A DNA stretch of 64,000 bases from Macrostomum lignano (Eukaryota): the NCBI GenBank assembly GCA_002269645.1, contig NIVC01000218.1:204407-268406 (forward strand). The letters are read 5' to 3'. The notes under the pieces are model-generated. The model ran no database searches and was not told where the DNA came from. It saw only the letters and a list, made by a program, of their open reading frames with translations. How positions within the stretch are numbered: position 1 is the stretch's first letter; every line of letters starts with the position of its first letter. Position numbers and translations under genes: made by a program. Of the stretch, positions 13,055-47,914 are shown piece after piece.

Positions 13055-13122
13055 CAGTCATGATTGCAAAATAAAAATATCAGAGTATTATGATGATAGT
13101 ATTAATCCATTCTCTGACCAAG
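13055..13122 (+). ncRNA. C/D snoRNA, guide for 28S U3797-equivalent (copy a)
   Basis: ATGATGA 13090-13096, CTGA 13114-13117; guide TTAATCCATTC antisense to 28S GAAUGGAUUAA; the +5 rule gives the U in GAA[U]GG (human Psi-m3797, SNORD17 target). Upstream box C degenerate (ATGATTG). Confidence 0.65.
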
Positions 13123-13503
13123 TTTATGTGTAAAGACTGGCTTATCATCTATTATATAAGTCTTGTCTTTTGCACTAAGTTGGTGTGCGCGCCACCTTGG
13201 AAGCTTCTCTATTTGTGCTGCTAATTTATTGTCACTTGGATATCTGGCAACCTATTCTAGCATTACAGGTTGTTAGTTTTCTGTCCTTTTTAAACAGAAA
13301 CACCTGTTTTGTATGCCTGATAATCCAATATGACTGCATGCATATTTGGAGATTGCTGTTAAGATGTTAAATTTGGATCTGAATGACTCTGATAAACTTG
13401 ATAGTATCTGTAAATTTTCATATTGCAATTGTATTTAACAATATTATCAAACTAATTATCAAAAATGCTTGTTTAATTATCAAAAAACCCAGCCTATTTG
13501 AAT

Positions 13504-13580: not shown

Positions 13581-13767
13581 TAATTTTGTGTGCTTATTTA
13601 CAACTTAATCAATATTTGCAACTATGTCCCTCTAAATATTGTTCTTTGTTTACACACATTTGCAGACTTGCTGTTTTTCCCCTTGTCACGAGCAATTAAC
13701 AAAAGCAAATCTGCTTCTGAAAATGTAAGTTCTGAAACATCTGGTACTTTAACAATTTGCTTTTTTA

Positions 13768-13848
13768 ATTTAATGATGAATACTTGACAAGCATATGTCG
13801 GAATGCACTCTTGTGCTTTCTGTAGATACTATTTTCATTCTGAATTTT
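13768..13848 (+). ncRNA. SNORD27: C/D snoRNA, U27/snR74-type (18S Am27/28)
   Basis: Box C ATGATGA 13773-13779; 12-nt guide GACAAGCATATG antisense to 18S CAUAUGCUUGUC before D' CGGA; box D CTGA 13840-13843. Confidence 0.85.
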
Positions 13849-13994
13849 AAATTTATTCAATCAACTTTTAGGCATTGGCGCTGTCTCATGTATGGCATTG
13901 GCGAATTTTATTTCAATCAACTTTTGCAAATTTCAGGAGCTGGCATACAAAAATCGCTACAAAGTCTTAAACATTTATTCGGTGAGTTTTCTTC

Positions 13995-14056
13995 GAAGCT
14001 GTGAAACAGTTGTCAGAGAAACGATGATGAATGCTTTAATCCATTCTCTGACTGAG
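13995..14056 (+). ncRNA. C/D snoRNA, guide for 28S U3797-equivalent (copy b)
   Basis: CAGA..ATGATGA (14024-14030)..TTAATCCATTCTCTGA (D 14048-14051), same guide as 13055-13122; 89 nt from acceptor 14140; box C unclear. Confidence 0.6.
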
Positions 14057-14168
14057 CTTTTCAAATGTGCTTGAATAGTTATAAAAGGTCTTCCAAATTG
14101 GGGTTTTTTGCCTCTATTGTTCCTTAACCTTTTCTTTCAGGCACAATTTGATTTGCTGTGTGCGCGCC

Positions 14169-14373
14169 NNNNNNNNNNNNNNNNNNNNNNNNNNNNNNNN
14201 NNNNNNNNNNNNNNNNNNNNNNNNNNNNNNNNNNNNNNNNNNNNNNNNNNNNNNNNNNNNNNNNNNNNNNNNNNNNNNNNNNNNNNNNNNNNNNNNNNNN
14301 NNNNNNNNNNNNNNNNNNNNNNNNNNNNNNNNNNNNNNNNNNNNNNNNNNNNNNNNNNNNNNNNNNNNNNNNN
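14169..14373. other. Assembly gap (about 205 N) inside the snoRNA host gene
   Basis: Run of n. Confidence 0.99.
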
Positions 14374-14520
14374 ATCGTTAAGAATCGATGCAAGTTTTCA
14401 TATTCACTTATTTCATTTTAGAGGACGCTAAAATCCAGCTGGAAAATTGTAAGCCTTCTTAACAGTGCTTCAGGTCAGTTAGCAATGCTTAAGTATTTTT
14501 CCCCACCCTTATTTTACTTT

Positions 14521-14604
14521 TTACAATGATGAATTAATTATAGCATAGTTCATATGAACTGTACCCAGTGTACGGCATGTACAGAATTTTCAAGCCTGAT
14601 ATTT
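14521..14604 (+). ncRNA. SNORD77: C/D snoRNA, U77-type (28S Am1521 / yeast Am817)
   Basis: Box C ATGATGA 14526-14532; guide GCATAGTTCA antisense to 28S UGAACUAUGC before D' ATGA, same register as U77; box D CTGA 14596-14599. Confidence 0.75.
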
Positions 14605-14779
14605 TATCTACCTATTAGCTACCTATTAGTTGTACCTATTTGATAAAACGACATCTTTTTTACAAGTCAGATATTTTTTTAATTTCTTTCCAGTTTGCCG
14701 CGTCAATGAAGTTTCACTGCTACATCCATCCAAGGTAATTTTTATTGCTCAGCTCTATTATATAACATATCTATAAATG

Positions 14780-14854
14780 CAGTGGCGGATCCAGGATTTT
14801 TTCCGTGAGGTCGGCCGACCCGATCCCCTTGACCCCCTTCTGGATCCGACAGTG
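14780..14854. mobile_element. 75-bp hAT-like mini-MITE
   Basis: Termini CAGTGGCGGATCCAG / CTGGATCCGACAGTG; 8-bp TSD TATAAATG / TATAAATA (7/8 match). Confidence 0.75.
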
Positions 14855-14857
14855 TAT

Positions 14858-14935
14858 AAATACGTGATGAAAATAACACATCTGTGTTTGATTTGGTCAT
14901 GATATATAATTTCCATGCATCACCATCTGATTTGC
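14858..14935 (+). ncRNA. SNORD33: C/D snoRNA, U33-type (18S Um1326), copy a
   Basis: Box C GTGATGA 14864-14870; guide CCATGCATCACCAT pairs 18S GUGGUGGUGCAUGG (with G-U pairs) before box D CTGA 14927-14930. Confidence 0.85.
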
Positions 14936-15104
14936 TTTTTTATTGGTATTAATAAAAAAAATATGTGCTTTTAATAAACTCGTCTCTACTGTAGCCATAT
15001 TTTCACTTGCCCATTTTAGTGCATTTTTCCTGGTTGGATATCAAGTCAAGTGTTAACTTGCAAAGTCAGGTAGGCTTACATTGTTGAACTTGTGTTTTTG
15101 TTAA

Positions 15105-15270
15105 TTGCGACTTTCTCGTTTCAATCACCGACACGCAAAAAATATCTTATTGGTGACTGATTCATTTAGTCGCTAGATTACACTGACAGCCGCATAAAAT
15201 CCAGAAGCAGAGTAGAGATCTTTTGTTTATCTCCCAAAGTGTCTGCTTTTGATGAGCGCGGATTACATTA
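15105..15270 (+). ncRNA. H/ACA snoRNA; 5' pocket predicted to guide pseudouridylation of 28S U3801-equivalent
   Basis: Hairpin 1 GCGACT..AGTCGC, H box AGATTA 15175-15180, hairpin 2 CCGC..GCGG with upper stem AGAAGCAGA/TCTGCTTTT, ACA 15265-15267. Pocket strands TCTCGTT and TTCATTT pair 28S GAAUGGA-[U]U-AACGAGA, 14 nt from the H box. Confidence 0.75.
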
Positions 15271-15334
15271 CTATTAATAGTAGTATTTAACAAAACCGAC
15301 CTCTTTATAATGGCAGAAATGGCACGCAATGTTA

Positions 15335-15418
15335 TAAATAATGATGATAACCCATAATTCTTCACTTTGAACTGAACAAATATCAACTGTGATGTTAGCA
15401 CTGGGTTCTGAACTATTA
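15335..15418 (+). ncRNA. Double-guide C/D snoRNA: U37-type (28S Am3697) plus SNORD88/snR76-type (28S Cm3680), copy a
   Basis: C ATGATGA 15341-15347; TTCTTCACTTTGA + D' CTGA 15372-15375; C' GTGATGT; AGCACTGGG + D CTGA 15408-15411; targets 28S UCAAAGUGAAGAA and CCCAGUGCU. Confidence 0.85.
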
Positions 15419-15454
15419 TAATCATGGCTGCCACCTATATTTGTTTAGATTCTT

Positions 15455-15546
15455 GTTAATTATGATGAAATTTTAATTTCCACAGTTCAATCGTCCGATA
15501 ATGCTTGATTAGATGCGGACTATTATTAGCTCTACCTGATAATTAA
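15455..15546 (+). ncRNA. SNORD44: C/D snoRNA, U44-type (18S Am166), copy a
   Basis: C ATGATGA 15462-15468; guide TATTAGCTCTA antisense to 18S UAGAGCUAAUA; D CTGA 15536-15539; terminal stem TTAATTA/TAATTAA. Confidence 0.85.
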
Positions 15547-15705
15547 ACAGTTGTTTTGTTATTAAAGTGAGTTTTTTGCATTTTTAATTGCAATTTTCAT
15601 GTTATTTTTTTATTTCAGATGTCTTCTACCGACCAATGTCATCTCGGGCTTTGAGGGGTAAGGCGTCTTTTTTATCTACTATTAGTAGCATAATTTTCAC
15701 TTTCT

Positions 15706-15811
15706 ATTTACATGATGATCTCTATTGATTAGTCTTTCTGAGCTTTGTAATTAGTTAATAAACATTTTAACCAATTACAAAACTGCTGACTAACGCCCCT
15801 ATCTGATAATT
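15706..15811 (+). ncRNA. SNORD80: Double-guide C/D snoRNA, U80/snR60-type (28S Gm1612) plus a second guide to AAAG[A]CUAAUC, copy a
   Basis: C ATGATGA 15712-15718; GATTAGTCTTT + D' CTGA 15738-15741; CGCCCCTAT + D CTGA 15803-15806; both antisense to 28S AUAGGGGCGAAAGACUAAUC. Confidence 0.8.
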
Positions 15812-16008
15812 AGTGTGTTAGTTGAAACTTTCATATGGTATTGAAGTATTTCATAAGACACCCGTCTAAGAAATTCATCCATTGTTTGTTTTAACACCGT
15901 TTTAGAATCCGATTCGTTTTTATGGCAAAATGGCACTGGTTCAACAAGTCTACAGAGCCAACAGGTGAGTTAATAGCCAGAATTATTTTAATATTTTTGC
16001 CTATGCTG

Positions 16009-16094
16009 ACTGTTATGATGATATGAATCACCTTTGGCTTTTGATAGGTTTCTTTAAATGAAAATTATCTACCATGCATCACCATCTGAGAAAT
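16009..16094 (+). ncRNA. SNORD33: C/D snoRNA, U33-type (18S Um1326), copy b
   Basis: C ATGATGA 16015-16021; guide CCATGCATCACCAT identical to copy a; D CTGA 16086-16089. Confidence 0.85.
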
Positions 16095-16257
16095 TTTTCT
16101 AACATTTACCAAAATCAGCCAGATGTGTGTGTCCAGAAATTCTACAGAAATTCTCCATCTCTACTCTGCATTCCAGTTGGCCCGTTCAAATTTTCAAACA
16201 AGAGTTAAAACAGGTAAAACTGACATTGTTTTAGTTTCTAACATCAATATACAATTC

Positions 16258-16348
16258 AGCATCCATTAATGATGATTTCATTTTACACCGTCATGCTGTT
16301 TGATTTCAATAATGAAATTTAACCATATTGGCAGCTGAGATGGATGCT
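16258..16348 (+). ncRNA. C/D snoRNA with 9-bp terminal stem; tentative targets 18S C18 and 28S ACAG[C]AGGACGGUG
   Basis: Stem AGCATCCAT/ATGGATGCT; C ATGATGA 16269-16275; D CTGA 16335-16338; D guide TATTGGCAG pairs 18S CUGCCAGUA; D' guide CACCGTCATGCTGT has one mismatch to the remembered 28S sequence. Confidence 0.75.
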
Positions 16349-16545
16349 CTACGGTGTACATTTGGTCTTATAGCATATTTAAGAAAATTATACTCGTAGA
16401 TAGCTAATTTGACTGCGTGTGTTCTAAGACGAATTTCTCTAAGTTTCTTCTTATCGTGTAACTTATGAATGGATAGTTTTGAGCAAACAAGCTGGCAATG
16501 GTGTAATAATCTTATCTATCAGATAGAATACACGCTTGGCTATTT

Positions 16546-16627
16546 TTATCATGACGATCCAACAATTTAGTATCAACCTTATCAGTGTATTGGATTCAAT
16601 ATAAAGCACTACAGCGCTCTGTCGTCT
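16546..16627 (+). ncRNA. U48-like C/D snoRNA candidate with degenerate box D (CTGT)
   Basis: ATGACGA 16551-16557; guide CTACAGCGCT pairs 28S GGCGCUGUGG in U48 register; box D reads CTGT 16619-16622, so possibly decayed. Confidence 0.45.
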
Positions 16628-16982
16628 AGATAAAGCTGGTATTTTAGCTCCTATTCGAGGCCTAAGTGTTTTGCTTAACGTATCTTCCTTATTTTATGTT
16701 GGTGCCTCCCAGGGTTTTTTTTTGTGCGCAGAGTGTGCGTATGCACCCTAAATTTTAAAATCGCACCCTGAAATTAAAAAAGTAGGTGCGGTTTAGGTGC
16801 GGTCTTATAACCATTTTTCTTTAAAGGCTTAACCATGCTTAAGCTATTTTTTATGCACTGCCTTAAAATATGAAACAAAATAACTCTTTAATTCCTATTA
16901 AGTCATATAGGCAATATAGCCTATAGCTATAGCCTTATGTAAGATATTAAAATATACATTCCCAGTTGTCTGAACTGTGAGC

Positions 16983-19466
16983 AATGTGAGGGTTTCACGA
17001 GAGATATTCAGACAAAGGCTCCCTAAAACACGCCCCACACCGGGCCCCGAACTGCTACACATTATAACATTTTTTGTCAATGCAGTATTTGATTGCAAGG
17101 AAAAGTTAAAATAGTAATGGAATAAATATCTTTATTTATTTTTTTAAATATTATTATTTTTATATTCTCGTTTTCATTATTAAATTATAATATTATTATT
17201 TTATTAATATTATTATTAATATCACTTATTGTTCACCGAATTTTATATTTCAAAGTAAAAAAACTAAATTTAATAAAAACTTGAAGCTTAACAGAAAATG
17301 CATTCTGAAGTGTCTTTAGTTAGTCCAATTTGTTTTAGTGTGTAGCGCTGCGGGGCGGTGCGGGGCGTGTTTTAGGGAGACCCATTCAGACAGACATTCA
17401 AAATGATTGTCTGTAACTTCAAACAAAATTGACCCGCTTCAACCATCTTTTTGGCAAATACTTACGCAAGTGTTGGGCGTCGAATAAGCTTTAATTTATT
17501 AACTGAAGTAAAAATCCTTCTGACATACATTGATTTAAAAATTGCTTAGCAACACTAGCTCTGATTAGAAATCGCTTTACTGTTGACTAAAATTGTTTTG
17601 ATCGTAGCAGCCTAAAGCAGATACTGGATTTAAAAATGCTTCGATTTACTCTATACGCATGTCTCAGCTTTAAAATGACACCTCAGGCGTCGCAAAAGAC
17701 AGCTTTGATGCTGAGATATTCGACACTAAACATGCATTGCTTTGCGCAATCTCACATTCAGAAATTTCACTGATTTTTTGTCGATATTTGTGCAGTTGCC
17801 ATGTCCTTGTTTTTCATCAGAATCTTGTCAAATTCTAGTCATGTCTATACGCATGTCTCAGCTTTAAAATGACACCTCAGGCATTGCAAAAGACAGCTTT
17901 GATGCTGAGATATTCGACACTAAACATTGCTTTGCTCAAACTCACATTCGGAAACTTCACTGATTTTTATTCAATATTTGTTCAGATGCTTGTCTACTTC
18001 TCCATTTATTAACCATCGCATGGAGCCTTGCTAACGTACAAGTGTATGTAGTTACAGTAAATGGGGTTTTTGTGACTCACTTAAACTTGTTTACGCATTC
18101 TGCAGCTATTCGCCGCCTTTCATTGGAGTGATTCATGGAGTCCAGTTGATAAATTTCCACAAATTGGACTGCTTCTACGTCAGATCTCAACATTTGGAAC
18201 CGTCCTTGAACTATTTCAGAGTTAAGTGAGCTAATGGCATCAAATGGAAGGCTAGTGCTCGTACTTGTAAGCGAAGCAGGTTCACAATTGAAATGGTTAT
18301 ATTCATGGCCATGGGATCTAAACTGATCTGTTTTACTTTCACGATCGCTTTGGTCTCAGAAGGAGCAGCAGTTGATGGACTGAGGTGAGAAGAAGATGTG
18401 TCACGACTTGAGCTGTTTATAGAAAATATCTTTATCCAATTAAATATTTTCATGCGGCTCCTTAGGTTGTTCCGAATTCCGAGTCTAGAAGTCAAGACAG
18501 AAAAAAAGTTAAGAACTGCTACTGTAGTCCGTAGGGATTGGAAAGCTTAGCAGTACATTAGAAATCGCCAGTTCAATCTAAAAAGTTTGAAGTACATATA
18601 GCTATTGGGTTGCAACAACAGTAGAAAAAATTCTTCCTTTTTATTTTATTCCCACCGCTTACCTCATTCCGATTTGGATAGCAGAATTGCCACGCAAAAA
18701 AAGTAAAAACATAACAATAAACTATTTGCTTCATATTAATTGCCACTGACTGTTAATAAACGCGACGTCAATTTCTCTCAATAACAGTTGGAACATGTTT
18801 CTCGTACACTCGTATATTTATTTGAACCGCAAAGCGGTGAAAAAGTCATGATTGGTTGCCATATGTACAAATGTACACTCACAGACTCACTGACTCAGGT
18901 ACAATCTATGCAATATAAAGGCAGGAATCATTAAAAATCAAATACTTAAGACAGTTTAAGAGAAGTCCAGGTTTAAACTGGACATGACTAAAATTTGACA
19001 AGTTTCTGATGAAAAACAAGGACACGGCAACTGCACAAATATCGACAAAAAATCAGTGAAATTTCTGAATGTGAGATTGCGCAAAGCAATGCATGTTTAG
19101 TGTCAAATATCTCAGCATCAAAGCTGTCTTTTGCGATGCCTGAGGTGTCATTTTAAAGCTGAGACATGCGTATAGAGTAAATCGAAGCATTTTTAAATCC
19201 AGTATCTGCTTTTAGGCTGCTACAATCAAAACAATTTTAGTCAACAGTAAAGCAATTTCTAATCAGAGCTAGTGTTGCTAAGCAATTTTTAAATCAATGT
19301 ATGTCAGAAGGATTTTTACTTCAGTTAATAAATTAAAGCTTATTCGACGCCCAACACTTGCGTAAGTATTTGCCAAAAAGATGGTTGAAGCGGGTCAATT
19401 TTGTTTAAAGTTACAGACGATCGTTTCGAATGTCTGTCTGAATATCTCTCGTGAAACCCTCACATT
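16983..19466. mobile_element. Foldback-type element with about 485-bp inverted arms (16983-17845 minus MITE; 18981-19466)
   Basis: Arms are near-identical reverse complements by eye; an about 140-bp part of the left arm is duplicated at about 17845-17990; no clear TSD; no transposase recognised. Confidence 0.85.
17015..17383. mobile_element. Mutator-like MITE, copy 2 (inverted relative to copy 1)
   Basis: Same TIR and interior as 1696-2091; 9-bp TSD ATTCAGACA at 17006-17014 and 17384-17392; the mirrored arm (about 19435-19443) has a single ATTCAGACA, i.e. the empty site. Confidence 0.9.
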
Positions 19467-19705
19467 CTAAACAAGACTCAAGAGAAATTGCACTCTGAGC
19501 CTTAAAATCGCACCTTGAAATTTGGCACAAGGTGCGATTTCGCACCTTATCTCTGGCGAAAAAAAAAACCCAGGACTGCCTCCCTAAAATCCTCAGATTA
19601 TGTGACGCACCTAATGCTGCATGATTCAGTTTACTTGTAAGTGACTGCCAATATGCTCGTAATATAATTAAATAAATATATAATTTGTATACTCGTACCA
19701 GAAAC

Positions 19706-19793
19706 TAACTAGTGATGAATAATTCCTTACCTACTATGATAATGTTTTAGAAAACTCCAGTTGTGATTTAAAAATATCCCTAATCTGACTTTA
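19706..19793 (+). ncRNA. C/D snoRNA, guide antisense to 28S GUAGGUAAGGGA
   Basis: C GTGATGA 19712-19718; TTCCTTACCTAC + D' ATGA 19736-19739; D CTGA 19785-19788, 88 nt from the acceptor. Confidence 0.7.
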
Positions 19794-19962
19794 TTACTAA
19801 TTATAGTATTTTACGCTACTATCTTAGGCATTTTTTTCAATTACTTTAAGTAGTCACTTTCCTCTCAAAATTTTAGTACATATTCTTGCTTGGCTGGCTA
19901 GTGCTGCAACTAATTTAGCAAGGTAAGATCAGTAGGACCTGTAGAGGCTTATGTTATATTAA

Positions 19963-20042
19963 GAATCCGTGATGATAACTCAGAATTCTTCACTTTGACC
20001 TGATTATTGACAATGTGATGATAGCACTGGGTTCTGAATTGT
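19963..20042 (+). ncRNA. Double-guide C/D snoRNA U37-type plus SNORD88-type, copy b
   Basis: C GTGATGA 19969-19975; TTCTTCACTTTGAC + CTGA 20000-20003; C' GTGATGA 20015-20021; AGCACTGGG + CTGA 20034-20037. Confidence 0.88.
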
Positions 20043-20092
20043 TTTTAATATAACTAGCCTCTAGTTTTTTAAAATCAGATTGCTTTTTTATT

Positions 20093-20179
20093 AGCTAAAT
20101 GATGACAAAAACAATTTGACACCTCTTGTCCGATGTAAATAACATAAATGCGGACTGTTATTAGATATACCTGAGAAAT
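20093..20179 (+). ncRNA. U44-type C/D snoRNA, copy b with diverged guide
   Basis: C ATGATGA 20099-20105, D' CCGA, C' ATGCGGA (as in copy a), D CTGA 20171-20174; guide TATTAGATATAC has 2 mismatches to the U44 target. Confidence 0.65.
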
Positions 20180-20362
20180 CATTTCTAGGACTCTAGTAAA
20201 ATGCGAAAATAATAAGCTACTATTGTTTAAGTCAATCAATTAAATCTTTTCAGCAGCGAATGCGGCTGATTGCTTCAAAATATGTCGAATTCAATTTTTT
20301 TCGCAGGTAGGCGTCTCTTATCAGTTGTTTGATTCTGAACTCTTAAGCAAGCTACTCCACCA

Positions 20363-20437
20363 CCTGTAATGATGATTTATATGGATTAGTCTTTCTTAGT
20401 TCTCAAATGTGCAGACAAACGCCCCTATCTGACTACT
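20363..20437 (+). ncRNA. SNORD80: U80-type double-guide C/D snoRNA, copy b
   Basis: C ATGATGA 20369-20375; GATTAGTCTTT + D' CTTA; CGCCCCTAT + D CTGA 20429-20432. Confidence 0.8.
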
Positions 20438-20616
20438 GTCAATTATAGCTATGCAAAATAGCTCATTTATGTAGTGTGCCAGACCTTTTATTGTCTGATT
20501 GTTAATTTACCATTTTATTTTTGCAGGAGTTCAATCAAATCCAGTTTGTGCTCTAAGATCTGCAGCTTTAAGGTGAGACAATGCTATTTCTAACCCAATA
20601 AATCAGGAGTTCACGT

Positions 20617-20707
20617 TGTAAAATGATGAGACATTTTTGGATCAACCATATGAGTCAATGTAGCTATTGGCTAAATGAATTGCGTCTAAAATTCTCTCTG
20701 ATTTATT
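20617..20707 (+). ncRNA. C/D snoRNA, guide for the 18S 5' end (U8), copy a
   Basis: C ATGATGA 20623-20629; GGATCAACCA antisense to 18S UGGUUGAUCC before D' ATGA 20650-20653; D CTGA 20698-20701. Confidence 0.75.
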
Positions 20708-20738
20708 GCCCCTTTCCAATATCCTACTAACCAGCTGT

Positions 20739-20828
20739 ACATCAATGATGAGACATTTCCTGGATCAACCATATGAGCCTGACTATTGTTAGGTCTATGA
20801 ATGGTGCCTAATCTTCTCTCTGAATGAT
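20739..20828 (+). ncRNA. C/D snoRNA, guide for the 18S 5' end (U8), copy b
   Basis: C ATGATGA 20745-20751; same GGATCAACCA guide + D' ATGA 20773-20776; D CTGA 20820-20823, 85 nt from the acceptor. Confidence 0.75.
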
Positions 20829-21375
20829 AGCAAATATCTACTAGGTCTGTTACTACAGGATTAAGCTGGGTAACTTTTAAGCGTCACTTGCTTCTCTTTA
20901 CATTTCAGAGCCTCGAAATTGCTTCTGGAGATTTCCTTTTTTATATTATCCGGCTCTACAAAACAATTGTGATAGACATTTTATTTGATTTGATTTGATT
21001 AAAGTCAAATTTTGACAGCAAATTGTAACTAATTTCTGTTATAATATATTTATTTACTGAGCCTATAAGCTTGCTAACAAACGAACGGTCTTTCTCTGTT
21101 TTCGCTGTTTCATGTATTTAAAGAGTTTATTAAATACAAATACGTAATATTATCTTGAAATCATGATATTCGTGATTTGATTACACCCTGAGAACATTCT
21201 GTCACTTTCACTAAAGGCATATTAGGATAGAGGATAGAAAAATGCAAGGCCCGTAACAGAAACTAGATATGTATAGAACGTGAAGGAATGTGCAGTTCTG
21301 AAAGCTAGTGTGTGAGGGAGCTGTAGTCGGGTAGTAGGTAGTAAGGGTGGAAAATGTAGGTTAGTAGTCATACTT

Positions 21376-21529
21376 GCGCAACCTTGGGAATCACTCGGCC
21401 GTTTCTATTGGCAACACGCATGTAAGTCGCTATTGGCTGAGAGCAGTCGCGTGACTACTATTCCGTCCAATAGCGGCTTACATGTGTGTGTTGCCAATAG
21501 AAACGGCCGGGTGAATCCCTAGGTTGCGC
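21376..21529. mobile_element. About 154-bp near-perfect palindrome (hairpin MITE-like)
   Basis: Arms GCGCAACCTTGGGAATCACTCGGCCGTTTCTATTGGCAACAC..GTAAGTCGCTATTGG and its near reverse complement; no TSD seen. Confidence 0.65.
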
Positions 21530-21552
21530 CCAAGCATGGTAGTAGTGTTAAA

Positions 21553-21843
21553 GACGCAGGTTTAGGGTAGCAGTGTAAAGGGAGGCAGGTGTAGGGTAGC
21601 AGCGTGAAGGAAGGCAGGTGTAGGTAGCAGTGTGAAGGGAGGCAGGTGTAGGTAGCAGCGTGAAGGGAGGCAGGTGTAGGTAGCAGTGTGAAGGGAGGCA
21701 GGTGTAGGTAGCAGTGTGAAGGGAAGCAGGTGTAGGTAGCAGCGTGAAGGGAGGCAGGTGTTGGTAGCAGCGTGAAGGGAAGCAGGTGTAGGTAGCAGCG
21801 TGAAGGGAGGTGTAGGTAGTAGTGTGGAGGGAGGCAGGTGTAA
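21553..21843. repeat. 28-bp minisatellite (GTGTAGGTAGCAGCGTGAAGGGAGGCAG)n
   Basis: About 10 tandem copies upstream of MCTS1. Confidence 0.9.
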
Positions 21844-21944
21844 GTAACAGCTTTAAGAGCTACGAACTTACTACTTTCGTTTCTACCTATATTCAGTCTT
21901 GCTTGATAATAATTTAAACAAATCACTACAACTTTCCCACAGCC

Positions 21945-22493
21945 ATGTTTCGCAAATTCGACGACAAAGAGAACATCTCGTCCGTAAACAACGCCAAGAA
22001 CAGTGTCCAGAAGGGTATCAGAAACACCATTCTGACGCAGTATCCGGGATGCGCAGATTACGTTGACCAGATTCTACCCAAGAAGGAGACGCTCAGCGTT
22101 GTCAAATGCCACGAGCACATCGAGCTGTACGCCAACCCGGCTGGCGAGGTGCTGTTCTTCAGGCAGCGCGACTCGCCGCTGTATCCCAGCTTGAAACTGC
22201 TGCACAGATATCCGTTCATGCTGCCGCACATGCAGGCGGACAAGGGCGCTATCAAATTCCTGCTGAACGGGTCCAATGTGATGTGCCCGGGCCTGACCAC
22301 GCCTGGCGGCCGGCTGTCCCAGGTGCCAGCTAGCACAGTTGTTGCCGTCATGGCCGAAGGCAAACAGCACGCGTTAGCAATCGGCTTGACGGCGATGAGC
22401 GCGGACGAGATTGCCAGCAAGAACAAAGGAGTTGGCATCGAGACTGTGCACTGTTTAAATGACGGCCTGTGGCGGCTGCGTTCTGTCAAGTAG
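21945..22493 (+). CDS. MCTS1: Malignant T-cell-amplified sequence 1 / Tma20 (PUA-domain translation re-initiation factor), 182 aa, intronless
   Basis: MFRKF..KE, KCHEH, LFFRQR, PSLKLLHRYPF, DKGAIKFLLNGSNVMCPGLT, EGKQHALAIG, NKGVGIE..H.LNDGLW all match the MCT-1 family. Confidence 0.97.
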   Translation: MFRKFDDKENISSVNNAKNSVQKGIRNTILTQYPGCADYVDQILPKKETLSVVKCHEHIELYANPAGEVLFFRQRDSPLYPSLKLLHRYPFMLPHMQADKGAIKFLLNGSNVMCPGLTTPGGRLSQVPASTVVAVMAEGKQHALAIGLTAMSADEIASKNKGVGIETVHCLNDGLWRLRSVK

Positions 22494-24105
22494 ATTTTCA
22501 TTTGCGCTTTTTCCCCTACTCATATCGTGTTAACTTGGAAGCTCAGAAATATAATTATTTAAGATAAGCCTTAATTGACGGGTATTAGTAAGATGTTTTA
22601 CTGTGTAAAATATTTCAACTACAAATATTTAATGACGTGTTAGTTATCCAGTCTTAATTACGATCGTATTTGATACAGAGGTACAAATCTTGTGGTGTAA
22701 CTTGTCATGTCATATAGACGCTTCTAAAAAGCTGAATTAAAGTAAACAGAAGGCATGTATCGCAGCAATGAAGCGAATGTGTCATCCAGTCTTGTAATAA
22801 ATGGCAGATCGGCAGGCTGTACAGTATTTTAGACACCCGTTACAGAATTGAATGCCCGTACAATCACTGATTCATAACAGCATTTCGAAAATTTTATTAC
22901 AAAAAATTGCCGCAGTACATCGGTACATGCATGCTACCTTCAACTAGTAAAAGTAAAAGTAAATCTGCTTACTATATGTACTTATACGAGTAATCCGATA
23001 AATGAGAAGAACTAATATCAGTCTACCACTAAATCGATGTCTTCTGCCGTGCTCTGTAGTCTCACAATTGAGATCGCCGCGGTTGGCTCTATTTTCTGTA
23101 ATTAAACTTGAACTAAAAAAACTTGCAGACTGAATTGTGTAAGCAAACAGAAAAAAGGATCGGAGAAGAGATCGAATTTCGTCCCATGCGGTCTATGGGG
23201 TGGGATCTCACATGGTTAACAATGGCAGGGTTTATACAAATAGAGCATGAGAACTAACTCTAGACCTGCATTGGTTGCTACGGGGGGCGAGGGTTAGGCG
23301 GTTAGGCTCCTCAGTTTTACAGTACACATACTCTGGTTGCGTTGGAGTATCTGGGAGAGGTTCAGTCCAAGTTCTTTTGCTGTTCTCTTGTGCGGGCCGC
23401 GGTCCGCGCGTCCATCCCTCGGTTGCCACGCCACTCGGGGTTGGGCGTCGGTCCTGGGCGTGCCCGCAGCTCCTCCCCAAGAGCTTCGTCTTGCGCTGCT
23501 GGGCACAATTGTGTTGCTGGGCACTATTGTTTTTATTCTTTGGCACAACGAACGCTCAAATTTCCTCTATCTTTGCCTTTCTTTCTGTCTCTAAGCTTTA
23601 GTTTCTATTTAAGTTTATTCTGCCGAATTTCTAAGCCCTATATAGTAAGTACTTTGACTCAACTTTTATGCTAACCCAATAAAATTATCTAATATATGAT
23701 TTTACCAAATAATGAAACTGCCTAGAATAGATTGATTCGTTATTGCACTATTAATAAGTGTTCAAAGCTTTCACCTTTAATTCTACTTGTGTTTGTCCAT
23801 CAACACATGGATTTTTGTCTGTCCGCGTCAACTTTATTTTTGTAGGATTCGCAAAGGCTGTACAAATAGAATAACTCAGTCTCGTTAATTCCATTCACAG
23901 TGATCTTTCTTCATCAATACTATTAAGCTGAAGCTGCAATCGTGATGGGGATGAGAGGAAGTCATATCGAGCACTAGTCCCCTAATTTCATAATACTATA
24001 ATTTATCTCATTTATCACCATATGGAGAATGTTCGACAAAGATTACACTTTCGTACAAGGAGTCAGGAGTTTTCCTTACACTTTCGTATAAGGAAAAAAG
24101 CCAGT

Positions 24106-32548: not shown

Positions 32549-47914
<15,366 letters not shown>

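What the first reader, a model, noticed from the sequence alone, without database searches (positions are those of the whole stretch)
15070..15618. Several snoRNAs per intron (intronic polycistrons)
Intron 15070-15618 holds an H/ACA, a U37/SNORD88 double guide and a U44-type RNA with no recognisable exon between them. Introns 19923-20253 and 20573-20908 each hold two C/D RNAs, and the intron starting at 16214 holds at least two. Vertebrates follow a one-snoRNA-per-intron rule because release is exonucleolytic after debranching. Multi-snoRNA introns need internal endonucleolytic cuts (RNase III-type in yeast and plants) or hidden micro-exons. Inference: a different processing route.
Basis: partly seen in the sequence, partly recalled or inferred. 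Interest (0 to 1): 0.75.

Follow-up and report, generated by a model that had tools for sequence, protein, structure and literature searches.

The report
Flatworm introns carrying several snoRNAs
A non-coding snoRNA host gene of the flatworm Macrostomum lignano packs two or three guide RNAs into single introns; this layout is already known from rice and fruit flies, but here each upstream RNA is wrapped in a long flanking stem that suggests how it is matured.

Summary
The window is Macrostomum lignano (GCA_002269645.1). Positions about 13.6-21.2 kb hold a UHG/GAS5-like non-coding host gene with at least 16 snoRNAs on the + strand.

By sequence, four of twelve introns hold more than one snoRNA:
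- 15070-15618: one H/ACA and two C/D.
- 19923-20253: two C/D.
- 20573-20908: two C/D.
- 16214-19596: two C/D plus a transposon.

Hidden micro-exons are unlikely. No GT in the four short spacers scores above -0.2 bits, against 4.9-14.3 for the 12 predicted donors. There are no GC donors and no AGGT sites.

New here: the last snoRNA of each intron lies 79-99 nt from the 3' splice site. Six of seven upstream C/D snoRNAs are enclosed by 21-27 bp external stems (-17.7 to -25.7 kcal/mol, Mann-Whitney p = 0.0017 against last-position snoRNAs). Paralogues show compensatory changes in these stems.

This fits the two known C/D assembly modes, splicing-coupled and stem-assisted. It also offers a double-stranded target for an endonuclease. 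No transcript data could be reached, so splicing and processing are inferred.

Intronic snoRNA clusters are already described in rice and Drosophila, so this is a new member of a known kind.

The parts
15020..15069 (+). Predicted host-gene exon upstream of the focal intron
   Evidence: Bounded by a Y-tract-TAG acceptor and a CAG|GTAGGC donor scoring 11.6 bits.
15070..15618 (+). Intron holding three snoRNAs (one H/ACA and two C/D)
   Evidence: GT-AG boundaries. No internal GT scores above -2.4 bits in the two spacers. No GC donor and no AGGT site.
15107..15270 (+). H/ACA snoRNA candidate
   Evidence: Minimum-free-energy fold is hairpin, AGAUUA, hairpin, ACA+3 at -39.6 kcal/mol (z = -1.95). Upper stems end 15 and 12-15 nt from the boxes. 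No Rfam family match. Its flanks do not form a significant stem (p = 0.21).
15301..15338 (+). 5' arm of the external stem around C/D 15341-15411
   Evidence: RNAduplex with 15415-15450 gives 25 bp at -17.7 kcal/mol (z = -3.1, p = 0.007). The stem is kept in the in-context fold.
15341..15411 (+). C/D snoRNA with two guides (SNORD37-type D' guide and SNORD88-type D guide); upstream member of its intron
   Evidence: Boxes are C AUGAUGA, D' CUGA, C' UGAUGU and D CUGA. Both guides are identical to the Rfam consensus (SNORD37 29.3 bits, SNORD88 17.8 bits). It lies 207 nt from the 3' splice site.
15415..15450 (+). 3' arm of the external stem around C/D 15341-15411; fills most of the 50-nt spacer
15462..15539 (+). 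C/D snoRNA of Z102/R77 (U44) type; last member of its intron
   Evidence: C and D boxes with a 6-bp terminal stem. The D guide is identical to the Z102/R77 consensus (26.5 bits). It lies 79 nt from the 3' splice site. No external stem (z = 0.27).
15619..15657 (+). Predicted exon downstream of the focal intron
   Evidence: TTTCAG| acceptor and GGG|GTAAGG donor scoring 11.1 bits.
16214..19596 (+). Intron with C/D 16269-16338 (upstream member, 26-bp external stem 16233-16268 / 16339-16375), degenerate C/D 16549-16630 and a 2.87-kb transposon (about 16706-19575)
   Evidence: The exon that follows, 19597-19636, was found by the donor scan (CTT|GTAAGT).
19923..20253 (+). Intron with two C/D snoRNAs, a paralogue of the 15341/15462 pair
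   Evidence: Members are C/D 19969-20037 (SNORD37 38.2 bits) and C/D 20099-20174. A 27-bp external stem, 19933-19967 / 20040-20069, encloses the upstream one at -25.7 kcal/mol (z = -6.3). The last member lies 80 nt from the 3' splice site.
20573..20908 (+). Intron with two tandem paralogous C/D snoRNAs (20623-20701 and 20745-20823)
   Evidence: An 11-bp perfect stem, 20596-20606 / 20698-20708, encloses the upstream copy and overlaps box D. The last copy lies 85 nt from the 3' splice site.
13666..21160 (+). Whole non-coding snoRNA host gene: 13 predicted exons of 27-60 nt plus a terminal exon, and at least 16 snoRNAs
   Evidence: Exon and intron table. The spliced ORFs have no homologue. Paralogous exons are no more alike than background.

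Best explanation
This is a UHG/GAS5-like non-coding snoRNA host gene of Macrostomum lignano that grew by segmental duplication. Four of its twelve introns are intronic snoRNA clusters: two or three snoRNAs lie in one intron with no exon between them.

Within each such intron the snoRNAs are set up differently according to position.
- The last C/D snoRNA sits at the canonical distance (79-99 nt) from the 3' splice site. It most likely assembles its snoRNP in the splicing-coupled way (Aquarius/IBP160) and is then freed by debranching and exonucleolytic trimming.
- The upstream C/D snoRNAs lie too far from the branch point for that. Each is clamped by a 21-27 bp external stem formed by its own two flanks. 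The stem brings boxes C and D together for splicing-independent assembly.
- I infer that the stem, or the short U-rich single strand left next to it, is where an endonuclease cuts. An RNase III-type enzyme or an EndoU/XendoU-type enzyme are the candidates. The cut gives Xrn2 and the exosome entry between the snoRNPs.
- The H/ACA RNA needs no such stem, because H/ACA assembly is co-transcriptional and independent of position.

Shown by sequence analysis: the snoRNAs, the splice signals, the lack of internal donors, the spacing rule, and the stems with their covariation.
Inferred: transcription, splicing, the assembly mode and the endonucleolytic step.
For: snoRNAs are real:
- Strand-specific excess of C boxes, 17 against 0, with 1.1 expected.
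- Guides identical to the SNORD37, SNORD88, Z102/R77 and snR55/Z10 consensus.
- The H/ACA candidate folds correctly.

Exon model:
- All 12 donors score 4.9-14.3 bits.
- In all 11 snoRNA-bearing introns not split by the transposon, the last snoRNA lies 79-99 nt from the 3' splice site. The transposon-split intron would give about 96 nt before the insertion.

No hidden exons:
- The best GT in the four spacers scores -0.2 bits. There are no GC donors, no AGGT sites and no usable U12 donor.
- The spacers are only 43-70 nt long and are largely taken up by stem arms.

Selection on both members of a shared intron:
- The unit 15020-15964 and its duplicate 19877-20572 keep only boxes and guides. Exons and spacers are at background identity.

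External stems:
- Six of seven upstream C/D RNAs give -17.7 to -25.7 kcal/mol (z = -2.6 to -6.3). Thirteen last-position C/D RNAs give -2.8 to -14.2.
- Mann-Whitney p = 0.0017.
- About 5% of control windows reach -17.7.
- The stems persist in the in-context minimum-free-energy folds.
- Paralogues 16269 and L002:93 have perfect stems of different sequence, AGCATCCAT and TGTATTCACC, so both arms changed together.

Second contig: L002 shows an intron (about 331-888) with three C/D RNAs obeying the same rule.

Literature:
- The optimal C/D position is about 50 nt upstream of the branch point, and long external stems make assembly splicing-independent (PMC5519232).
- Rnt1 acts in splicing-independent release of yeast intronic snoRNAs, and XendoU releases Xenopus intronic snoRNAs (PMC10557570).
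Against: - There is no transcript, small-RNA or cleavage-site evidence of any kind. A search with translated spliced exons found nothing.
- Exons are predicted with a crude, generic splice-site matrix.
- One upstream C/D RNA (20623) lacks a flank-only stem. Its 11-bp stem overlaps box D, which might hinder assembly rather than help it.
- The stem idea came after looking at the data. It rests on 7 against 13 snoRNAs from one gene family, several of them paralogues and so not independent.
- The external stems have no terminal tetraloop and enclose a 70-nt RNA, so they are not classical RNase III or Drosha substrates.
- No Rfam match reaches its gathering score.
Confidence: 0.6

Rival explanations
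1. Hidden micro-exons or recursive splice sites put each snoRNA in its own intron, so the ordinary one-per-intron exonucleolytic route is enough.
For: - The exons of this gene are already tiny, 27-60 nt.
- Each spacer has one acceptor-like Y-tract-AG (15316, 15448, 20078/20094, 20734). That is 5 sites against about 1.5 expected.
Against: - No GT in any spacer scores above -0.2 bits, against 4.9-14.3 for the real donors.
- There are no GC donors and no AGGT zero-length exon sites. The single ATATCC has no upstream AG.
- An upstream snoRNA would then lie less than 50 nt from a 3' splice site, against 79-99 nt for every other snoRNA.
- The spacers are largely occupied by stem arms.
Confidence: 0.07
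2. No endonuclease is involved. Each excised intron yields only one mature snoRNA, whichever snoRNP assembled, or it yields a stable snoRNA-ended dimer like a mammalian sno-lncRNA.
For: - In mammals two snoRNAs in one intron give sno-lncRNAs (PMC11028025, PMC10557570).
- Spacers folded alone are unstructured.
- The external stems are explained well enough by assembly alone (PMC5519232).
Against: - Both members of the duplicated pair have kept intact boxes and guides while everything else diverged. This argues that both are productive.
- The spacers of 43-70 nt are far shorter than known sno-lncRNA bodies. That comparison is from my own knowledge.
- Rice and Drosophila intronic clusters are described as a snoRNA expression strategy (titles of the cited primary papers, seen in PMC3089462 and PMC5932544). 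Those papers were not readable here.
Confidence: 0.17
3. The predicted exons are not used. The region is an unspliced polycistronic snoRNA precursor of the plant or yeast type, cut between all units.
For: No transcript evidence for splicing was obtained. The exons are not conserved between the duplicated units.
Against: - Thirteen segments are each bounded by a Y-tract-AG and a GTRAG donor.
- The distance from the last snoRNA to the acceptor is strikingly constant at 79-99 nt.
- External stems are found only on snoRNAs that are not next to an acceptor. That pattern has no reason to exist without splicing.
Confidence: 0.08
4. The upstream copies are decaying duplicates, and only the snoRNA nearest the 3' splice site in each intron is functional.
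For: One internal copy (16549-16630) has degenerate boxes, CAUGACGA and CUGU.
Against: - The upstream copies 15341, 19969, 16269 and 20623 have perfect C and D boxes and conserved guides.
- The SNORD37/SNORD88-type RNA occurs only in upstream positions in this window.
- The degenerate copy is the one next to a transposon insertion.
Confidence: 0.05

Closest known systems
Intronic snoRNA gene clusters of rice (Liang et al. 2002) and Drosophila melanogaster (Huang et al. 2004, 2005), as cited in PMC2780460, PMC3089462 and PMC5932544
   Same: Two or more snoRNAs lie inside one spliceosomal intron of a host gene, which breaks the vertebrate one-per-intron habit. Review PMC11028025 treats this layout as a standard category.
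   Different: - The Drosophila clusters are described as H/ACA clusters (PMC3089462), and H/ACA next to C/D is called uncommon there (PMC5932544). Here the clusters are mainly C/D, and one mixes H/ACA with C/D.
- The host phylum is new. No flatworm snoRNA organisation paper was found.
- I am not aware of a position-dependent external-stem rule being reported for those clusters. The primary papers were not readable here.
Two modes of mammalian intronic box C/D snoRNP assembly (Hirose & Steitz 2001; Hirose, Shu & Steitz 2003; IBP160/Aquarius 2006), summarised in PMC5519232
   Same: The optimal position is about 50 nt upstream of the branch point for splicing-coupled assembly, and long external stems allow splicing-independent assembly. 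In this gene, last-position snoRNAs obey the distance rule and upstream ones carry the stems.
   Different: In mammals the two modes were described for single snoRNAs in separate introns. Here both would operate side by side within one intron. Nothing has been tested biochemically in flatworms.
Yeast Rnt1 (RNase III) release of intronic and polycistronic snoRNAs, and S. pombe Pac1 (PMC10557570, PMC12508059, PMC10932220)
   Same: An endonuclease cuts double-stranded RNA next to snoRNAs so that exonucleases can trim them. The Rnt1-Nop1 case acts on an external stem flanking a C/D snoRNA in an intron (PMC10932220).
   Different: There are no NGNN/AGNN tetraloop hairpins in the spacers, and spacers alone are unstructured. 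Whether a flatworm RNase III touches these stems is unknown.
XendoU/EndoU release of intron-encoded snoRNAs in Xenopus (PMC10557570)
   Same: Splicing-independent endonucleolytic release of intronic snoRNAs in an animal. That the enzyme cuts at U-rich single strands, which the spacer remnants here would offer, is from my own knowledge.
   Different: It is described for single snoRNAs per intron. No cleavage data exist here.
Mammalian sno-lncRNAs (PMC11028025, PMC4234469)
   Same: Two snoRNAs share one intron.
   Different: There the outcome is a stable long RNA capped by snoRNPs at both ends, with no separation. Here the spacers are 43-70 nt and the snoRNAs carry conserved rRNA guides.
UHG/GAS5-type non-coding snoRNA host genes
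   Same: Short unconserved exons, no conserved ORF, and conserved snoRNAs in the introns.
   Different: Classical UHGs hold one snoRNA per intron. Four of twelve introns here hold two or three.

Membership tests
Box C/D snoRNA (15341-15411, 15462-15539 and paralogues) | Box C (RUGAUGA) near the 5' end and box D (CUGA) near the 3' end, brought together by a short terminal stem | tested here: met
   Perfect AUGAUGA or GUGAUGA and CUGA boxes with terminal stems of 3-7 bp. Strand-specific excess over chance.
Box C/D snoRNA (15341-15411, 15462-15539 and paralogues) | Guide of 10 nt or more upstream of D or D', complementary to rRNA | tested here: inconclusive
   The guides are identical to the SNORD37, SNORD88 and Z102/R77 consensus guides. 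The M. lignano rRNA was not available. Matches to 28S and 18S are from my memory of the human sequences only.
Box C/D snoRNA (15341-15411, 15462-15539 and paralogues) | Rfam family gathering score reached | tested here: not met
   No gathering-level match in the window. Best scores are 38.2 against 45 (SNORD37), 26.5 against 40 (Z102/R77) and 17.8 against 46 (SNORD88). Low scores are expected for short, fast-evolving snoRNAs of a distant phylum.
Box H/ACA snoRNA (15107-15270) | Hairpin, hinge (ANANNA), hairpin, then a tail with ACA 3 nt from the 3' end, with pockets 14-16 nt from the boxes | tested here: met
   The minimum-free-energy fold gives this layout. AGAUUA is at 15175-15180 and ACA at 15265-15267. 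Distances are 15 and 12-15 nt. The fold z-score is only -1.95, and no target or Rfam match was found.
Intronic snoRNA gene cluster (rice and Drosophila type) | Two or more snoRNAs between one 5' splice site and one 3' splice site, with no exon between them | tested here: met
   Met at sequence level only: strong outer splice sites and no plausible internal donor.
Intronic snoRNA gene cluster (rice and Drosophila type) | The host transcript is spliced as predicted and each snoRNA accumulates as a separate RNA | not testable with these tools
   No flatworm transcriptome or small-RNA data were reachable. The translated spliced-exon search found nothing.
UHG/GAS5-like non-coding host gene | No conserved protein-coding potential; exons evolve freely while the intronic snoRNAs are conserved | tested here: met
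   Spliced ORFs of up to 81 aa have no homologue among 5.8 billion proteins. Paralogous exons are 12-37% identical, against 80% for the SNORD37/88-type C/D RNA.
UHG/GAS5-like non-coding host gene | One snoRNA per intron | tested here: not met
   Four of twelve introns hold two or three snoRNAs.
Yeast-type RNase III (Rnt1) processed polycistron | Stem-loops with NGNN/AGNN tetraloops in the spacers between snoRNAs | tested here: not met
   Spacers folded alone give -0.9 to -7.4 kcal/mol, with z from -1.1 to +1.3.
Stem-assisted (splicing-independent) intronic C/D snoRNA | Long external stem formed by the sequences flanking the snoRNA, on snoRNAs outside the optimal distance from the branch point | tested here: met
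   Six of seven upstream C/D RNAs have 21-27 bp stems and none of the 13 last-position ones does. p = 0.0017. Paralogues show compensatory changes. The function of the stems was not tested.

The most novel reading that the evidence does not exclude
Flatworms may use a position-coded, two-track pathway that lets many snoRNAs share one intron. The branch-point-proximal snoRNA matures by splicing-coupled assembly. Every upstream C/D snoRNA is a stem-clamped module that is cut out of the same intron by a double-strand-specific endonuclease recruited to the snoRNP. That would be an animal counterpart of the yeast Rnt1-Nop1 reaction on U18. If general, it would identify the so far unknown step that resolves intronic snoRNA clusters in animals.
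Probability: 0.25. Interest if true: 0.55.

Novelty: new member of a known kind. Interest (0 to 1): 0.4.

Why it matters
How animals separate snoRNAs that share a precursor is largely unknown (PMC12508059). This locus offers a compact natural test set. It has paralogous snoRNAs in the last position and in upstream positions, and those positions differ in having or lacking external stems, which show compensatory changes between paralogues. To my knowledge M. lignano is also amenable to RNAi and transgenesis. The locus extends intronic snoRNA clusters to Platyhelminthes. It also suggests a simple design rule, distance for the last snoRNA and a stem for the others, that could be checked genome-wide and in Drosophila and rice. 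It does not overturn current views of snoRNA biogenesis.

Tried and rejected
- **Rfam at gathering thresholds.** No match in the whole window. Only sub-threshold matches were usable.
- **Transcript evidence by proxy.** I translated the predicted spliced exons, which give ORFs of up to 81 aa across the junctions, and searched 5.8 billion proteins that include assemblies of sequencing runs. Nothing came back. This says nothing for or against splicing, because in the 20-kb locus only MCTS1 had a called gene.
- **Spacers as RNase III stems.** Folding the spacers alone showed no structure. The relevant pairing turned out to be between the two flanks of a snoRNA.
- **Other splice-site types.** GC-AG donors, recursive AGGT sites and U12 donors in the spacers: none usable.
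- **External stem around the H/ACA RNA.** Not significant (p = 0.21).
- **Metagenome scans.**
  - The double-guide pattern gave 0 hits.
  - The SNORD37-type guide alone gave two contigs from an unidentified eukaryote. Each has a single snoRNA in an intron of a protein-coding gene. They are not informative for this locus.
- **Primary papers.** Liang 2002 and Huang 2005 are not held, so their content is cited only through later papers.
- **Second contig.** L002 is 99.9% identical over 14374-24000, so it gives no evolutionary contrast there. Only its different upstream 2.4 kb was useful.

Full report
**Origin of the window.** The intronless MCTS1 gene at 21945-22493 is found, identical, on two contigs of assembly GCA_002269645.1: NIVC01000218.1, which is the window, and NIVC01004954.1, fetched as L002. 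From memory, this is the Mlig_3_7 assembly of the free-living flatworm Macrostomum lignano (taxonomy).
- L002 is 99.9% identical to window 14374-24000.
- To the left of the window's assembly gap (Ns at 14170-14373) L002 carries a different 2.4 kb that holds seven more C/D snoRNAs.

**The snoRNAs are real.**
- Rfam at gathering thresholds finds nothing. With permissive thresholds the matches are all on the + strand and all to C/D families.
- The guides are identical to family consensus guides.
  - C/D 15341-15411 carries AAUUCUUCACUUUGA (SNORD37) before D' and AGCACUGGGUU-CUGA (SNORD88) before D.
  - C/D 15462-15539 carries UAUUAGCUCUA-CUGA (Z102/R77; the link to U44 is from my memory).
  - C/D 14864-14930 carries CAUGCAUCACCAUCUGA (snR55/Z10).
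- From my memory of human rRNA, these guides pair with 28S around A3697 and C3680 and with 18S around A166. The flatworm rRNA was not available to check this.
- In 5 kb of the gene there are 17 RTGATGA motifs on the + strand and none on the - strand, with 1.1 expected. Nine full C/D candidates were found against 0.08 expected.
- The H/ACA candidate at 15107-15270 folds as hairpin, AGAUUA, hairpin, ACA+3 with correct pocket-to-box distances. It has no Rfam match, and its fold z-score is only -1.95.

**Gene model.**
- Thirteen short segments of 27-60 nt are each bounded by a pyrimidine tract plus AG and by a GTRAG-type donor scoring 4.9-14.3 bits.
It ends the intron that starts at 16214.
- In every intron not disrupted by the transposon, the last snoRNA ends 79-99 nt before the 3' splice site. 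Removing the transposon gives about 96 nt for the 16214 intron as well.
- This regularity matches the position optimum known for mammalian C/D snoRNAs, about 50 nt upstream of the branch point (PMC5519232). It is the best internal evidence that the exon model is right.
- The spliced RNA has only chance ORFs of up to 81 aa, and these have no homologue.
- Between the duplicated units 15020-15964 and 19877-20572 only snoRNA boxes and guides are conserved. Exons and spacers are at background identity.
- This is the signature of a UHG/GAS5-type non-coding host gene.

**Several snoRNAs per intron.**
- 15070-15618: H/ACA, C/D, C/D, with spacers of 70 and 50 nt.
- 19923-20253: C/D, C/D, with a spacer of 61 nt.
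- 20573-20908: C/D, C/D, with a spacer of 43 nt.
- 16214-19596: C/D, a degenerate C/D, and a transposon.
- On L002 the intron at about 331-888 holds three C/D snoRNAs, with no donor of 4.5 bits or more between them.
- The U37/88-type plus U44-type pair was duplicated as a unit. It has kept its two-in-one-intron layout in both copies while everything non-functional diverged. Both members are therefore under selection.

**Hidden micro-exons are unlikely.**
- In the four short spacers the best GT scores are -2.4, -3.0, -6.2 and -0.2 bits.
- There are no GC donors and no AGGT recursive sites. The single ATATCC has no upstream AG.
- Each spacer does contain an acceptor-like Y-tract-AG, 5 sites against about 1.5 expected. 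I cannot explain this.
- A micro-exon would also place the upstream snoRNA less than 50 nt from a 3' splice site, against 79-99 nt everywhere else.

**A structural rule not in the finding.**
- Spacers folded alone are unstructured.
- An inverted-repeat scan and duplex folding of the 40 nt on either side of every C/D snoRNA show that the upstream members are enclosed by long external stems:

| Upstream C/D | Base pairs | Energy (kcal/mol) |
|---|---|---|
| 15341 | 25 | -17.7 |
| 16269 | 26 | -22.1 |
| 19969 | 27 | -25.7 |
| L002:93 | 21 | -21.1 |
| L002:369 | 24 | -22.7 |
| L002:578 | 21 | -19.2 |

- Against shuffled flanks these give z from -2.6 to -6.3.
- The thirteen last-position snoRNAs give -2.8 to -14.2 kcal/mol with z near 0. 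Mann-Whitney p = 0.0017.
- About 5% of control windows reach -17.7.
- The stems survive in-context minimum-free-energy folding for 15341, 19969, 16269, L002:369 and L002:578. For L002:93 the in-context fold differs.
- The exception, 20623, has an 11-bp perfect stem (20596-20606 / 20698-20708) that overlaps box D.
- Paralogues 16269 and L002:93 have perfect stems of different sequence, AGCATCCAT and TGTATTCACC, so both arms changed together.
- The H/ACA flanks form no significant stem. This fits the position-independent, co-transcriptional assembly of H/ACA snoRNPs (PMC10557570).
- The stem arms fill most of each spacer, which also explains why the spacers are so short.

**Mechanism.**
- The pattern reproduces, inside single introns, the two assembly modes described for mammalian intronic C/D snoRNPs. 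One is splicing-coupled at the optimal distance. The other is splicing-independent when long external stems fold the RNA (PMC5519232).
- Assembly alone does not separate two snoRNPs on one excised intron. In mammals that situation yields sno-lncRNAs (PMC11028025).
- I therefore infer an endonucleolytic cut. Two precedents exist: RNase III at a flanking stem, as yeast Rnt1 does (PMC10557570, PMC10932220), and a U-specific EndoU/XendoU-type enzyme, as in Xenopus (PMC10557570).
- Which enzyme acts, and whether the cut happens at all, cannot be decided from sequence.

**Comparison with what is known.**
[quoted passage not shown] It is a standard category in a recent review (PMC11028025). The Drosophila cases are H/ACA clusters (PMC3089462).
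- The layout is therefore not new.
- What is new here is the phylum, since no flatworm report was found; the dominance of C/D members and one mixed intron; and the position-dependent stems.

**Limits.**
- There are no expression data.
- The splice-site scores come from a generic matrix.
- The stem rule was noticed after the fact and rests on one gene family in one genome.

Noticed in passing
window 16706-19575: A 2.87-kb transposon-like insertion with an 8-bp target duplication (TGCCTCCC), CAGGG-T(9-10) termini and long internal inverted repeats (17384-17845 against 18981-19443, 97% identical). It sits between the C/D-like RNA 16549-16630 and its 3' splice site. That RNA has degenerate boxes (CAUGACGA and CUGU), while its paralogue L002:728-801 is intact. 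The insertion may have broken the distance rule and released the copy from selection.
   Followed up: partly
window 14170-14373 and L002 1-2424: At the assembly gap the two near-identical contigs diverge completely on the left side. L002 carries seven other C/D snoRNAs and two exons there. The window's left flank may therefore be misjoined, or the gap may hide several kb of further host gene.
   Followed up: partly
window 15462-15539 against 20099-20174 and L002 2322-2393: The U44-type paralogues share the D guide but differ in the D' guide. The window copy at 15462 has AAUUUCCACAGUUCAAUCGU, and the other two have UUGACACCUCUUGU. One guide seems to have changed its target after duplication.
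   Followed up: no
window 15316, 15448, 20078, 20094, 20734: Each short spacer between snoRNAs has an acceptor-like pyrimidine tract plus AG but no donor, 5 sites against about 1.5 expected. To my knowledge M. lignano uses spliced-leader trans-splicing, so use of these sites as trans-splice acceptors cannot be excluded.
   Followed up: partly
window 13090-13117 and 14023-14051: Two very short C/D-like elements (C box, then UUAAUCCAUUCU, then CUGA, only about 28 nt) are each followed 70-110 nt later by the motif TGTGCGCGCC (13183-13195 and 14157-14168). They may be truncated snoRNAs or repeated promoter-proximal units of tandem host genes.
   Followed up: no
window 21384-21521 and 21538-21851: A near-perfect long hairpin of about 138 nt hits the plant MIR851 and MIR399 models far below their thresholds (50.7 bits against 90). 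It is followed by an array of about 28-bp tandem repeats just upstream of MCTS1. It is probably a MITE-like or hairpin repeat and not a plant-type miRNA.
   Followed up: no
window 21945-22493: An intronless, GC-rich MCTS1 (Pre-PUA and PUA domains) gene lies immediately downstream of the AT-rich host gene. It is present identically on both contigs.
   Followed up: partly
window 14780-14856: A GC-rich inverted repeat (GGATCCAGG ... CTGGATCC) lies upstream of the snR55/Z10-type C/D RNA in intron 14735-15019. It is possibly a small inserted element.
   Followed up: no
window 38898-40895 (- strand): A 665-aa ORF lies in a GC-rich block surrounded by microsatellite-derived pseudo-ORFs. It was not examined and may belong to a mobile element.
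   Followed up: no
L003 1196-1225 and L004 925-954 (- strand): Two metagenome contigs from an unidentified eukaryote carry a SNORD37-type C/D RNA. It stands alone in an intron of a protein-coding gene, which is the ordinary one-per-intron layout.
   Followed up: partly
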